A stretch of DNA of 64,000 nucleotides, from NCBI RefSeq assembly GCF_963506605.1, contig NC_083287.1:9424001-9488000 (forward strand). The letters are read 5' to 3'. Numbering within the stretch: position 1 is the stretch's first letter; each line of letters begins with the position of its first letter. The DNA is from Zootoca vivipara. Its lineage: Eukaryota. Below are positions 20,124 through 43,688 of the stretch, piece by piece. The position numbers and the translations under genes are program-made. The notes below the pieces were generated by a model that made no database searches, was not told the DNA's origin, and saw only the letters and a list, made by a program, of their open reading frames with translations.

Positions 20124-20483
20124 CATAGCTGTCAACTTTCGGATTTGAAAATAAGGGATCAGCAGCAGCCTCACTTGTCCCGGGGACAGTCTACGGCAGG
20201 CACCCCCAAATTGCAGCCCTCCAGATGTTTTGGCCTACAACTCCCATGATCCCTAGCTAAGAGGACCAGTCGTCGGGGAAGATGGGAATTGTAGTCCAAA
20301 ACATCTGGAGGGCCGAAGTTTGGGGATGCCTGGTCTATGGTATATCTAACAATCCAGGATAGCAACATGGGAAACGGCGCTGGAATAAGGGAATTTCCAG
20401 CAAAAAAAAAGGGGGGGGAGGCTGACAGCTGTGGCTTGGAATAAGGGAGTTTCCTGCAAAAAAAAGGAGGGTTGACAGCTATG
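20124..20483 (+). mobile_element. hAT MITE, family B (CATAGCTG termini), carrying a nested family A MITE
   Basis: TIRs CATAGCTGTCAAC / GTTGACAGCTATG; perfect TSD GTTTATTG. Confidence 0.92.
20197..20332 (-). mobile_element. Family A MITE nested in a family B copy
   Basis: TSD GTCTACGG/GTCTATGG; reverse orientation relative to the nested copy at 43409. Confidence 0.93.
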
Positions 20484-21360
20484 GTTTATTGTATTTGTAG
20501 TTTTGCTTTCCTATTTGGTGAAATGACAATAAATTTTGCATTGGAACAAAATCAGATAAGCTTAGGAAAGCAAAACACGAGTGTGTTACATAGGGGGGCG
20601 CGCGCGGTATTTTCCCTCCTTCAACAAATGTGATTGTGCTGTAATAAAGTACAGAAGAAGAAACAACCATTGAAGTACTGGTGTCAGTTTGCAACTTTGT
20701 TATTGTTGAATTTGAGATTGGGAAATTGAAAATAAAATTTGTTAGCCAGGTGATGCGAGATGGTATTTATCAGTATGGAATCCTCTCTTTTTTAAAAAAT
20801 AAAATAAAATAGAGACTGCAGTAACATCTGCCATGCCTGCAAATGATAAATGTATGTTGAAAGAACCAAATTCGTGAGGGTGTCGCCATAGCTAGATGTA
20901 AGTTCCTGTGGGCATTACAACTTCCCACAAGGATGATGATGATCTGCACCTTGTGAATGCATAGCAAAATGTCACATGAAGAAGGTCTTGTTATGGAGGC
21001 ATTTATTTGTGGGTGTCTATCAAGGAATATTCACATGCTACATTAGCCACAGGTAATTTGCCAGAAAACATTTTATTCCCCATTTCCAATAAACATTATC
21101 ATGGATTTGACACTTGCCCATGAAGCATTTGCCACATATTGGGGGCGGGGGGGGGGGGGGGGGAGAATGATTCATACTTCTAGAGAAAACATTTATCCAA
21201 GCTACAGATAAATTCTTGAAGTTGAAGTCTGTTACATTAGCCACATCTTTAAAAAACAATAAAAAGAGAGCACTTAAAATACCTGTGTCATACTTTTTGA
21301 ATAATTTTTGTAGAATTATTTTTGTAGGGAAGATCAACGCAGTTAAGAAACAAATACTTT

Positions 21361-21436
21361 AATGTTAATTATTAATAATATTAGCTAAATGTTAATGATA
21401 TTAGCTAAATGTTAATTAAAAATAATATTAGCTAAA
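21361..21436. repeat. Short AT-rich minisatellite (~3 copies of ATATTAGCTAAATGTTAAT)
   Basis: Direct observation of imperfect tandem units. Confidence 0.75.
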
Positions 21437-21510
21437 ACACAAACTATTAGGTAAAAAAGCTTACAAATGTAACATTGCTACCATACAATTACCGTATAAT
21501 GGCTCAATAG

Positions 21511-21659
21511 CAGTGCTTTTTTTCCTGGGGGTACCCAGGGGTACGCATACCCCTAAATATTTTGTGAATCTAAGCTTGGCCTCATTGAGGGGCAGTATTT
21601 CAATATGAATAGGAAAATGAGAGTACCACTAAACATTTTTTTTTAAGAAAAAAGCATTG
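21511..21659. mobile_element. hAT (Tip100-like) MITE
   Basis: TIRs CAGTGCTTTTTT / AAAAAAGCATTG; perfect TSD CTCAATAG. Confidence 0.88.
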
Positions 21660-22606
21660 CTCAATAGTATTTCACACCAGAGACCAATATGATTACAAGG
21701 AACCTCTAACAATAATTGGCTTTAACAATAATAAAAAAATTAATCTAGAGCATTATATTAAACATTACCCTCTTAGTCCTAGGAAACAAAAAGGCTTCTG
21801 GTTTGTTTGTTTGCTTAGCAGAACACAAAGCAGTTCAAATAGTGGTCATCACTGTAACTCTGGATAAAATCAGTCTTCAATGAGAACTGATATGAAAGAA
21901 AACCAAGTATATTATTTTCTGCCCTGGTCCTAGAGAAGTAACATTCTTGTTTGTTCCTCAAGGTATTATTAACTATTGTTGCAAAAGGGTGTTGAATTCT
22001 GCCCAAAGAACTGTAAAGTATTGGAATGAAAACTGTACTTAGGTTTTCTGAAACCATCAATTTATAAGACACCATAAGAATGGGATATTTATGCACTGTG
22101 CAAGAAAAGTGTTTGCAGCTAACAGTTCCCTGTGTTATTGTTACTGATACAGATGCTGAAAAACCAGATTTGGGGATTTGGACCCAAATATTTGTCCTTA
22201 ACTCAGTGATAATCTTAGGTGATACTATTCTGCAGAAGTGTGATGAGGAAAAACTCCTGGTCTGATCTTGTAGTATTACCGCCTTTCCATGACTCAGCTC
22301 AGCAACTTGCCAACTTGAAAATGTCATTAAAATGTCATTGCAATTTATGACATGATAAGTATGTGTTTGCTTGCTTGCTTTGTAGCCTTCTCTGGTTGTG
22401 ATGCTTCCCCACATCAAAGTTTCATAACTTGTCTGAAGCTGGGATATATAAATATGTAACTGGGTGAAACAGACTTAAGATGGCTTGTGAACCTTTCATA
22501 AATGTTCCTCAGTGGGTTTGGTTTGTTCCATTGCTGCACAAATGTTAAGGGAACAATCCTTTAAAAACCCTTAAAATTTTCATGTTTATAATTGTATAAG
22601 ATGTGT

Positions 22607-22684
22607 TTCTTCTTCTTCTTCTTCTTCTTCTTCTTCTTCTTCTTCTTCTTCTTCTTCTTCTTCTTCTTCTTCTTCTTCTTCTTC
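22607..22684. repeat. (TTC)26 microsatellite
   Basis: Perfect trinucleotide run. Confidence 0.98.
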
Positions 22685-42225: not shown

Positions 42226-42509
42226 CAGTGGTGCCTCGCTAGACGAACGCCCTGTAAGACTAATTTTTCGCTTCACGAAAGGATTTTCCGAGTGGAGGTT
42301 GCCTTGCTAGACGAATTCATTTTACGAAAAATTCGTCTAGTGAATCGCGGTTTCCCATAGGAATGCATTGAAATTCAATTAATGCGTTCCTATGGGCAAA
42401 AAAATAAAATAAAAAATTCAATGCATTCCTATGGGATTCGCTAGACGAATTTTTTGTTATAAGAATTGACCCGTGGAACAAATTAAATTCGTCTAGTGAG
42501 GCACCACTG
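42226..42509. mobile_element. Tc1/mariner (Tigger-like) MITE
   Basis: TIRs CAGTGGTGCCTCGCTAGACGAA / TTCGTCTAGTGAGGCACCACTG; TA TSD; internal palindrome CCCATAGGAATGCATT...AATGCATTCCTATGGG. Confidence 0.92.
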
Positions 42510-42971
42510 TACATTAGTCAAAACTGCATACAAACATGTATTTAAGACAATTTTAAACTAAAATGCTGAAAAATTTTCATGTATTATTATTCATTTCACT
42601 TCTACATTGCTGTATATTTTTAAGGGGGGGGGGGAAACTCAGCAGTTTGCAACCTGCATTAAAACATCAAATAAAACAATCCAGACAAAAACATTACAGA
42701 AGAAAGTAAACTATAAATTTCAAAGCGACATAAGAGGAAACTAAATTATCTTACCCATTTCAAAACAAAACATTACAAAGGAGGTATAAACATTACAAAT
42801 TGTGTATAAACATAGACTTGGCATGGACAAATTTAACGATATTTGGAATTTATAAAAACTGTATTAGGTTAAATATTGCTTAAAAACAATAACAATCTTG
42901 TAATGTTTATAGGTTCTTTATTTGTATTGAATAAGGGTAATTTTAACTTTTTTCTTCCCTCCCCTTTTTCA

Positions 42972-43115
42972 NNNNNNNNNNNNNNNNNNNNNNNNNNNNN
43001 NNNNNNNNNNNNNNNNNNNNNNNNNNNNNNNNNNNNNNNNNNNNNNNNNNNNNNNNNNNNNNNNNNNNNNNNNNNNNNNNNNNNNNNNNNNNNNNNNNNN
43101 NNNNNNNNNNNNNNN
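42972..43115. other. Assembly gap (144 N)
   Basis: Run of n. Confidence 1.
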
Positions 43116-43155
43116 AATATTGTTCCCCTCAAAAAAAATAATGGGGGACCAAAAC

Positions 43156-43279
43156 TAAGGTTACCAGACGTCCCCGCTTCCCGGGGACAGTCCCCAGATT
43201 TACAAATCAGTCCCCATACAAAATCCACTGAAATTGAAAAGTATCCCTGGACTCATTGAAAAAAAATCTGGTAATCTTA
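43156..43279. mobile_element. 124-bp minimal hAT (Blackjack-like) MITE with the same ends as 35462-36210
   Basis: TIRs TAAGGTTACCAGA / TCTGGTAATCTTA; TSD ACCAAAAC/GCCAAAAC. Confidence 0.87.
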
Positions 43280-43338
43280 GCCAAAACTTCCTTGGCCCCC
43301 AGAAGAGTCAGTGTCTATGGAAGTGACTGTTGCCTTGG

Positions 43339-43688
43339 CATAGCTGCCAACTTTCGGATTTGAAAATAAGGGATCAGGAGCCTCACCTGTCCCGGGGACA
43401 GTCTATGGCAGGTATCCCCAAACCTCGGCCCTCCAGATGTTTTGGACTACAATTCCCATCATCCCTGACCACTGGTCCTTTTAGCTAGGGATCATGGGAG
43501 TTGTAGGCCAAAACATCTGGAGGGCCATAGTTTGAGGATGCCTGGTCTATGGTATATCTAACAATCCAGGATAGCAGTGGGAAATGGCGCTGGAATAAGG
43601 GAATTTCCAGCAAAAAAAGGAAAAGTTGACAGCTGTGGCTTGGAATAAGGGTTGTTTCCCGCAAAAAAGGGGAGGGTTGACAGCTATG
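43339..43688 (+). mobile_element. hAT MITE, family B, carrying a nested family A MITE
   Basis: CATAGCTGCCAAC...GTTGACAGCTATG; perfect TSD TGCCTTGG. Confidence 0.93.
43409..43544 (+). mobile_element. Family A MITE nested in a family B copy
   Basis: Perfect TSD GTCTATGG; forward orientation. Confidence 0.93.

What the first reader, a model, noticed from the sequence alone, without database searches (positions are those of the whole stretch)
20124..43688. A MITE that repeatedly targets one exact site inside another MITE
Seen: family B copies at 20124-20483 and 43339-43688 have the same orientation and different TSDs. Both contain a family A MITE at the identical position GGGGACA[GTCTAYGG]TATATC with the 8-mer duplicated. 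The A inserts are in opposite orientations and carry different diagnostic variants (CCCATCTTCCCC type, as at 5505, versus CCCATCATCCCTGACC type, as at 45457). A third B copy (36769-37015) is empty, with one GTCTACGG. Inference: these are independent insertions, so family B supplies a strong Buster-type landing pad, hit in 2 of 3 local copies. A may use B as a safe haven and ride along when B moves.
Basis: partly seen in the sequence, partly recalled or inferred. Interest (0 to 1): 0.8.

Follow-up and report, generated by a model that had tools for sequence, protein, structure and literature searches.

The report
Nested transposon hotspot in a lizard MITE
One very abundant mini-transposon of a lizard genome has landed at least twice, independently, at the same base of another mini-transposon because that spot holds half of its preferred landing sequence; insertion hotspots of this kind are already known in human and plant genomes.

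Summary
Two copies of MITE family B (20124-20483, 43339-43688) each hold a 136-bp hairpin MITE of family A between duplicated GTCTAYGG. A third B copy (36769-37015) has the site once and is empty. The two A inserts are flipped along their whole informative length and belong to two different major A subfamilies, so they are separate insertions. The assembly gap lies 223 bases outside B2 and touches nothing.

Raw reads from two other individuals add three things:
- A has roughly 50-60 thousand copies and B roughly 700-900.
- About a third to a half of all B copies are interrupted at exactly this site.
- A has a strong palindromic target preference, GATG[STCTAGAS]CATC. This is the known NTCTAGAN rule of Charlie/Buster-type hAT elements.

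B's site carries one good half of that target (GGACA-GTCTA).

The landing-pad reading is supported and explained by a known rule. It has a direct precedent in human MER1 hAT elements, which hit the same MIR3 positions in both orientations. I could not decide whether the high share of filled B copies comes from hundreds of independent hits or from a few hits followed by copying of B+A composites. The "safe haven / ride along" idea is therefore untested. Earlier notes of this scan report similar same-spot hAT insertions in SINEs of this genome.

The parts
20124..20483 (+). B1: family B MITE, with a 13-bp TIR (CATAGCTGTCAAC) and subterminal direct repeats. It holds A1. The outer 8-bp TSD is GTTTATTG at 20116-20123 and 20484-20491.
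20197..20332 (-). A1: family A hairpin MITE (136 bp, arms 57 nt, 86% complementary). It is of subfamily CATCTTCCCCGACGAC and is in the opposite orientation to A2. Its TSD is GTCTACGG at 20189-20196 and GTCTATGG at 20333-20340.
43339..43688 (+). B2: family B MITE in the same orientation as B1. It holds A2. The outer TSD is TGCCTTGG at 43331-43338 and 43689-43696.
43409..43544 (+). A2: family A hairpin MITE of subfamily CATCATCCCTGACCAC. Its TSD is GTCTATGG at 43401-43408 and 43545-43552.
36769..37015 (-). B3: an empty family B copy with outer TSD GACCCTGT at 36761-36768 and 37016-37023. One arm carries a 42-43-bp tandem duplication. The unoccupied site CCGTAGAC lies at 36904-36911.
5505..5640 (+). 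Solo A copy with TSD GTTTACAT, of the same subfamily as A1.
7577..7711 (+). Solo A copy, older (about 10% from the majority sequence), with TSD CACTAGAG.
18314..18449 (-). Solo A copy with TSD CAGTAACT / CAGTAGCT.
45457..45592 (+). Solo A copy with TSD GCATAAAC, of the same subfamily as A2.
42972..43115 (.). Assembly gap (144 N). It lies between B3 and B2 and outside every element and TSD discussed here.

Best explanation
**What the two families are**
- Family A is a 136-bp hairpin MITE of the Charlie/Buster branch of hAT transposons, with TIR CAGGCAYCCCCAAAC.
- Its transposase chooses a palindromic target, about GATG[S-TCTAGA-S]CATC, and duplicates the central 8 bp.
- Family B is an unrelated, much rarer hAT-like MITE. 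Its TIR is CATAGCTGYCAAC, and its 8-bp TSDs show no TA rule.
- B's consensus holds one good half of A's target, GGACA-GTCTA, at a single position.

**What happened**
- Every B copy spreads that half-site around the genome, and A has entered it repeatedly.
- The two local composites are separate insertion events, in either orientation, from two different A subfamilies.

**Shown**
- The anatomy of the elements.
- The independence of the two events.
- A's target consensus.
- About a third to a half of B copies are split at exactly this base.

**Inferred**
- The half-site is what directs A there.

**Open**
- Whether the high genome-wide share reflects very many independent hits or a few hits later multiplied when B's own transposase copied B+A composites.
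For: **TSDs of A.** All seven A copies in the window that have TSDs carry 8-bp duplications with a central TA.

**A's target preference, from raw reads of two individuals.**
- The consensus of the unmatched read ends before A's first base is ...GATG-[G/C]TCTAGAC.
- The consensus after A's last base is CTTTAGAC-CATC.
- 7,251 of roughly 22-25 thousand boundary reads run on through GTCTA and then read GACCATCC.
- About a third of all A copies therefore have GTCTA directly next to them.

**Fit to known families.**
- NTCTAGAN is the published TSD of Charlie-like hAT families.
- Anolis hAT-HT2 has TIR CAGGGGTCCCCAAACT, which is close to A's (PMC3014272 table 1; PMC2836564).
- TcBuster uses a central TA in 96% of integrations.

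**Independence of A1 and A2.** All four arm-diagnostic positions are swapped and three linked subfamily sites differ. Both variants are major genome-wide (34% T at 43461, 28% C at 43466).

**Genome-wide use of the site.**
- The precise-empty joint 43400->43545, plus its listed near variants, totals 328 reads in one run and 312 in the other (279 and 289 for the exact joint).
- B depth is about 810-860.
- This gives 32-54% of B copies interrupted at the site.

**Local contrast.** 2 of 3 B sites are filled against 0 of 53 other GTCTA pentamers.

**Natural controls.** The B-like element at 54990-55293 and the family C copy at about 43152-43283 keep similar flanking sequence but lack TCTA. Neither carries A.
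Against: - B's site matches only half of A's palindrome. The right half, CGG-TATA, does not fit GAC-CATC.
- By my rough count, generic GTCTA half-sites are occupied at about 1-3%, so sequence preference alone under-predicts the 32-54% seen in B by ten-fold or more.
- Three other exact GTCTAYGG 8-mers in the window (1536, 43313, 7249) are empty. With such small numbers this is not significant (P = 0.4).
- The interrupted share is a model estimate from split-read counts. I could not confirm that every interrupted copy holds A.
- I obtained no B copies outside the window, so I have no orientation ratio and no trees.
Confidence: 0.78

Rival explanations
1. Ride-along as the main driver. A entered B's site only a handful of times, in master copies. 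B's own transposase then copied the B+A composites, so most filled B copies are descendants and not new hits.
For: - Expected occupancy from A's generic half-site preference is only a few percent, yet 32-54% of B copies are interrupted.
- Both local composites keep intact B TIRs and perfect outer TSDs, so composites look mobile-competent.
- A and B copies are of similar age, about 2-4% from their majority sequences.
- A weak lead comes from place 43550, in the right-hand TSD. About 38% of B reads carry T there, far more than CpG decay would give. Both local filled copies have T and the empty one has C.
Against: - The two local composites differ in A orientation and subfamily, so at least two founding events are needed.
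- No pair of identical composites with different outer TSDs was seen.
- The link between T at 43550 and filled status could not be tested from summary tables.
Confidence: 0.42
2. True super-hotspot. Most of the several hundred filled B copies are independent A insertions. Something beyond the 8-mer makes this B position many times more attractive than other half-sites. Candidates are the adjoining 15-bp palindrome CTGTCCCGGGGACAG, local DNA shape, or chromatin state.
For: - Two of two sampled composites are independent events.
- Three B copies lie within 23.5 kb although only about 0.035 are expected per window. If they arose by local hopping of an empty B, the A inserts must have come later.
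- Levy et al. found that nesting hotspots are often not predicted by known integration motifs alone.
- One locus shows a joint that looks like a hAT excision footprint (GTCTACG-CTATGG, tables 5 and 5c). This shows turnover of A at this site.
Against: - It needs an occupancy comparable to, or above, what I estimate for perfect GTCTAGAC sites.
- No shared rare variants show that the three local B copies are related in situ.
- I have no genome-wide orientation or subfamily data.
Confidence: 0.4
3. One insertion followed by inversion. A entered B once, the composite spread, and recombination between A's two arms flipped it in one lineage.
For: A's arms are 86% complementary, and their outermost 16 bases are identical. 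A crossover there would flip every diagnostic position.
Against: - Inversion cannot create the three linked subfamily differences between A1 and A2 at positions 53, 58 and 62.
- Each of those states is shared with solo copies elsewhere in the window and with 30-65% of all A reads.
Confidence: 0.04
4. Chance coincidence or assembly artefact.
For: None beyond the presence of a gap inside the span of the finding.
Against: - P is about 1e-5 for two of seven A copies on these sites.
- Hundreds of reads from two other individuals show both the empty and the interrupted form of B.
- The gap lies outside all elements.
Confidence: 0.01

Closest known systems
Nesting hotspots of human MER1-type hAT elements inside MIR3 (Levy, Schwartz & Ast 2010, PMC2836564)
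   Same: Non-autonomous Charlie-like hAT elements with the NTCTAGAN target insert at the same positions of another repeat family, in both orientations. The hotspot is read from many nested copies.
   Different: Here the target is itself a hAT-like MITE of only about 800 copies, and a very large share of those copies (about a third to a half) is filled. The host is a lacertid lizard. Co-mobilisation of host and guest is possible in principle, because the host is a cut-and-paste element.
Nested MITE multimers of rice and maize (Jiang & Wessler 2001, as summarised in PMC5172404)
   Same: MITEs insert into other MITEs more often than expected. Some families, such as Ditto, are favoured targets. 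The multimers were judged to arise from independent insertion events.
   Different: Those are Tourist/Stowaway-type elements with 2-3-bp targets. Here a single 8-bp site of one family takes nearly all the hits. I could not read the original paper because it is not held in the library.
hAT-HT2 / hAT-HT3N non-autonomous families of Anolis carolinensis (Novick et al. 2011, PMC3014272)
   Same: The TIR CAGGGGTCCCCAAACT is close to A's CAGGCATCCCCAAACT (13 of 16 bases by eye). Both have 8-bp TSDs of type NTCTAGAN and both are Charlie-related lizard elements.
   Different: A is a 136-bp near-perfect hairpin with about 50-60 thousand copies, far more than any Anolis family listed. No autonomous partner was identified here.
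TcBuster / Buster-clade hAT transposases (PMC3499496)
   Same: 8-bp TSD with a nearly obligatory central TA (96% of 27,985 integrations).
   Different: A's preference extends over the whole 8-mer and about 4 bp on each side. The transposase that moves A is unknown.

Membership tests
hAT superfamily, Charlie/Buster group (family A) | 8-bp target site duplication | tested here: met
   7 of 7 local copies have 8-bp TSDs. Five are perfect and two differ by one transition.
hAT superfamily, Charlie/Buster group (family A) | Central TA / NTCTAGAN target consensus | tested here: met
   7 of 7 local TSDs are nnnTAnnn. Read-end consensus from tens of thousands of reads is [S]TCTAGA[S], flanked by GATG and CATC (table 7).
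hAT superfamily, Charlie/Buster group (family A) | Terminal motif YARNG | tested here: not met
   A starts CAGGC, so the fifth base is C and not G. The first four bases fit, and the TIR as a whole resembles CAGGGGTCCCCAAACT of Anolis hAT-HT2.
hAT superfamily, Charlie/Buster group (family A) | Autonomous partner encoding a hAT transposase with matching ends | not tested
   None lies in the window, and the rest of the genome could not be searched with these tools.
hAT-like MITE (family B) | 8-bp TSD and terminal inverted repeats | tested here: met
   3 of 3 copies have perfect 8-bp TSDs and a 13-bp TIR. The B-like element at 54990-55293 also has an 8-bp TSD.
hAT-like MITE (family B) | Terminal motif YARNG | tested here: not met
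   B starts CATAG, so the third base is T and not a purine. The superfamily assignment of B rests on TSD length only.
MITE (both families) | Short, non-coding, TIR + TSD, high copy number | tested here: met
   A is 136 bp with about 50-60 thousand copies. B is 206-247 bp with about 700-900 copies. Neither has a meaningful ORF.
Nested-insertion hotspot (sense of Levy et al. 2010) | Same position of the target repeat hit in several copies, by independent events, in either orientation | tested here: met
   There are two independent events in the window. Genome-wide, 32-54% of B copies are interrupted at the same base. The number of independent events beyond two is unknown.
Co-mobilised composite element (guest riding in host) | Composites with the same guest, orientation and private mutations but different outer TSDs | tested here: inconclusive
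   Only two composites could be read and they differ from each other. No other copies could be fetched.

The most novel reading that the evidence does not exclude
The B site may be more than a motif match. One possibility is a context-dependent super-hotspot, where hundreds of independent A insertions are drawn by something next to the half-site, such as the adjoining CTGTCCCGGGGACAG palindrome. The other is that A has become a regular passenger that multiplies through a second, unrelated transposase when B+A composites move. Each would be a quantifiable vertebrate case of one MITE family's spread being shaped by another.
Probability: 0.4. Interest if true: 0.5.

Novelty: new member of a known kind. 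Interest (0 to 1): 0.3.

Why it matters
It gives a clean vertebrate example of how a sequence-specific hAT transposase turns another repeat family into a recurrent landing site. It also supplies a read-based target logo for a 50-60-thousand-copy lizard MITE. For annotation, about a third to a half of family B copies will be reported as split or as a false "long B subfamily" unless the nested A is recognised. If the excess over generic half-sites proves real, it offers a natural system for asking what, beyond the 8-bp motif, guides hAT target choice. The principle itself, meaning nesting hotspots, the NTCTAGAN rule and MITE-in-MITE multimers, is already established.

Tried and rejected
**Fetching more B copies**
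- An exact conserved B 25-mer found nothing in metagenome, prokaryote-genome or viral contig collections.
- Two word searches with peptides read from open frames across B found no candidates. One frame stops at the site and the other reads through it. The idea was to reach lizard contigs through spurious gene calls.

**Relative age of guest and host**
- A1 has about 2% private changes against 4.4% for B1.
- A2 has 3.7% against 1.5% for B2.
- The counts are too small, and the B majority sequence is biased towards B2, so this is uninformative.

**Orientation ratio from reads**
- Not recoverable. Composite reads are about 1% of reads over A, below any listing threshold.

**Contig depths as allele shares**
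- Rejected. Depth-weighted contig frequencies disagree with read frequencies at many places, for example 43609 (6% against 43%). I therefore did not use them to argue that empty copies carry C at 43550.

**Inversion by arm recombination**
- Considered seriously, because the outer 16 bases of the arms are identical. Rejected on the three linked subfamily differences.

**Orthologous loci in related species**

**Other limits**
- The original Jiang & Wessler paper is not held in the library.
- The species is taken from earlier notes of this scan (common lizard). I did not verify it.
- The genome size of about 1.45 Gb used for copy numbers is from memory.
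Full report
**Observation**

- B1 (20124-20483) and B2 (43339-43688) lie in the same orientation.
- Both have perfect 13-bp terminal inverted repeats, CATAGCTGYCAAC.
- Their perfect 8-bp outer duplications differ: GTTTATTG for B1 and TGCCTTGG for B2.
- B3 (36769-37015, other strand, outer duplication GACCCTGT) holds the uninterrupted string GGGGACAGTCTACGGTATATC. This is the only such match in the window.
- In B1 and B2 a 136-bp element sits between two copies of the 8-mer. 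B1 has GTCTACGG and GTCTATGG. B2 has GTCTATGG twice.

The assembly gap (42972-43115) ends 223 bp before B2. No element, duplication or argument here crosses it. Only the B3-B2 distance depends on its estimated length.

**What A and B are**

Family A:
- It is a near-perfect hairpin with arms of 57 nt, 86% complementary, and about 20 nt between them.
- Its ends are CAGGCAYCCCCAAAC.
- The window holds six full copies, a short 83-bp relative and two degenerate pieces.
- All seven copies with recognisable duplications have 8 bp with a central TA: GTTTACAT, CACTAGAG, CAGTAACT, GCATAAAC, TTCTAGTA and GTCTAYGG twice.

Family B:
- It is 206-247 bp long with subterminal direct repeats.
- Its 8-bp duplications do not follow the TA rule, so a different transposase must move it.
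- Neither family fits the strict YARNG end motif. A starts CAGGC and B starts CATAG.
- B's placement in hAT rests on duplication length alone.

**Independence of the two inserts**

A's two arms differ at positions 17 (T/G), 38 (A/C), 45 (T/C) and 52 (C/G). All four are swapped between A1 and A2, so the flip covers the whole informative length.

The outer 16 bases of the arms are identical. An inversion by arm recombination with a crossover there could mimic such a flip. It cannot produce the three linked differences in the asymmetric centre:
- A1 has CATCTTCCCCGACGAC, shared with the solo copy at 5505.
- A2 has CATCATCCCTGACCAC, shared with the copies at 45457, 18314 and 7577.

In raw reads both types are major subfamilies. 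The T variant at 43461 is 34% and the C variant at 43466 is 28%. I therefore take the two inserts as separate insertion events.

By chance, two of seven A copies landing on these three TA sites has P about 1e-5.

**Genome-wide picture from reads**

I laid about 1.5 Gb of raw Illumina reads from each of two other individuals, plus contigs of two more runs, on 43310-43720 at 80% likeness.

Copy numbers:
- Depth is about 810-860 over B's arms and 54-61 thousand over A's centre.
- At roughly 1x coverage this gives about 700-900 B copies and 50-60 thousand A copies. The genome size of about 1.45 Gb is from memory and not verified.

Share of empty and interrupted B copies:
- Reads that skip exactly from 43400 to 43545 are the precise empty site, with the 8-mer ambiguous.
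- These, with their listed near variants, total 328 and 312 in the two runs (279 and 289 for the exact joint). Several of the variants look like CpG-decay forms of the 8-mer.
- Correcting for the minimum anchor a split read needs (15-30 nt), empty copies are 46-68% of B.
- So 32-54% of B copies are interrupted at this very base.
- The 2 of 3 in the window is therefore typical.
- I could not verify that every interrupted copy holds A.

**A's target rule**

The unmatched ends of reads from the tens of thousands of other A copies give a consensus (table 7):
- Before A's first base: ...GATG-[G/C]TCTAGAC.
- When the last base happens to match G: ...GATG-CTCTAGA.
- After A's last base: CTTTAGAC-CATC.
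- A separate class of 7,251 reads runs on through GTCTA and then reads GACCATCC.

So the target is a palindrome, about GATG[S-TCTAGA-S]CATC. Roughly a third of all A copies have GTCTA directly beside them.

This is the published NTCTAGAN rule of Charlie-like hAT elements:
- Levy et al. 2010, PMC2836564.
- Novick et al. 2011, PMC3014272 table 1, where Anolis hAT-HT2 has TIR CAGGGGTCCCCAAACT and TSD NTCTAGAN.
- TcBuster, with a central TA in 96% of integrations, PMC3499496.

B's site reads GGACA-GTCTA-CGG-TATA. The left half matches A's consensus at 8 of 10 bases and the right half does not.

Two natural controls agree. The B-like element at 54990-55293 has CCGTAATT at the corresponding place. 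The family C copy at about 43152-43283 has GGGGACAGTCCCC. Both keep similar flanks without TCTA, and neither carries A.

**What stays open**

The window holds 53 other GTCTA/TAGAC pentamers, none occupied (Fisher P = 0.002 against 2 of 3 in B). Scaling this up, generic half-sites are occupied at roughly 1-3%. This is my own rough estimate. B's 32-54% is at least ten-fold higher.

Two explanations fit, and I could not separate them:
- The site is intrinsically much hotter than its 8-mer predicts, for example through the adjoining CTGTCCCGGGGACAG palindrome.
- A few independent hits were multiplied when B's transposase copied B+A composites.

For the first:
- Both sampled composites are independent events.
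- The three B copies are clustered (about 0.035 expected per 64 kb, P about 7e-6). If this reflects local hopping of an empty B, the A inserts came later.

For the second:
- The size of the excess itself.
- The intact ends and duplications of the composites.
- A lead I could not test. About 38% of B reads carry T at 43550, which is position 6 of the right inner duplication. That is far more than CpG decay gives. Both local filled copies have T there and the empty one has C.

One single-copy locus shows a joint reading GTCTACG-CTATGG. It looks like a hAT excision footprint, which suggests that A has also left this site at least once (tables 5 and 5c).

**Failed routes**

- No further B copies could be fetched. 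The conserved B 25-mer is absent from the three public contig collections.
- Two peptide word searches meant to reach lizard contigs found nothing.
- Host-versus-guest age counts were too small to use.
- Contig depths proved unreliable as allele shares.

**Comparison and verdict**

The phenomenon has direct precedents:
- Human MER1-type hAT elements use the same positions of MIR3 in both orientations.
- Nested MITE multimers from independent insertions are well described in rice and maize.

Earlier notes of this scan on other pieces of this genome report the same theme. One describes hAT MITEs in one spot of Sauria SINEs. Another describes an abundant hAT mini-transposon splitting a SINE at its preferred target. 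I did not check whether those concern family A.

This is a new member of a known kind. The "landing pad" reading is supported and explained. The "safe haven / ride along" reading is untested. The unusually high share of filled copies is the one feature worth a genome-wide census.

Noticed in passing
window 20124-43688 (B1, B3, B2): Three family B copies lie within 23.5 kb, although reads indicate only about 700-900 copies genome-wide. About 0.035 copies are expected per 64 kb, so P(>=3) is about 7e-6. This could be local hopping or a regional preference. The three copies share no rare variants.
   Followed up: partly
window 54990-55293: A B-related element with ends CATAGCTGCCAAG and GTTGACGGGTATA and TSD GGCCAGTC. 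It carries a CpG-rich, internally palindromic cargo, with GCATGTCTGGACATGC-type hairpins at about 55100-55245. At the place homologous to B's site it reads CCGTAATT, and it has no A.
   Followed up: partly
window 43152-43283 and 36141-36214: A third MITE-like family (C) with ends TAAGGTTACCAGA and TCTGGTAATCTTA. It shares the motif CCCGGGGACAGTC with B but continues CCCC instead of TACGG.
   Followed up: no
reads laid on window 43405->43547 (tables 5 and 5c): One single-copy locus elsewhere in the genome reads GTCTA+CG+CTATGG at B's site. Both 8-mers are retained with 3 bases lost between them, which looks like a hAT excision footprint of A. It appears in 7 reads in one run, 1 read in the other, and one contig in each of the two contig runs.
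   Followed up: no
reads laid on window 43406 (table 3): About 890 reads per run carry A at position 6 of the left duplication, followed by GG. That is more than all B reads together. It may mean that A is also nested at a fixed ...TAAGG site of some other abundant repeat.
   Followed up: no
window 51730-51812: An 83-bp A-like element with different ends, CAGGCTTACTCAAC and GAGGAAGCCTG, and a perfect TSD TTCTAGTA. It is probably a sister family using the same target rule.
   Followed up: no
window about 13800-15300: A GC-rich, CpG-island-like stretch with long low-complexity open frames on both strands. It is probably a promoter or first exon, so the MITE cluster may lie in a first intron.
   Followed up: no
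window 36920-37015 (B3): B3 carries a 42-43-bp tandem duplication of its subterminal repeat. The same "goes back 43" joint is seen in only 16-35 reads per run, which is a few percent of B copies.
   Followed up: partly
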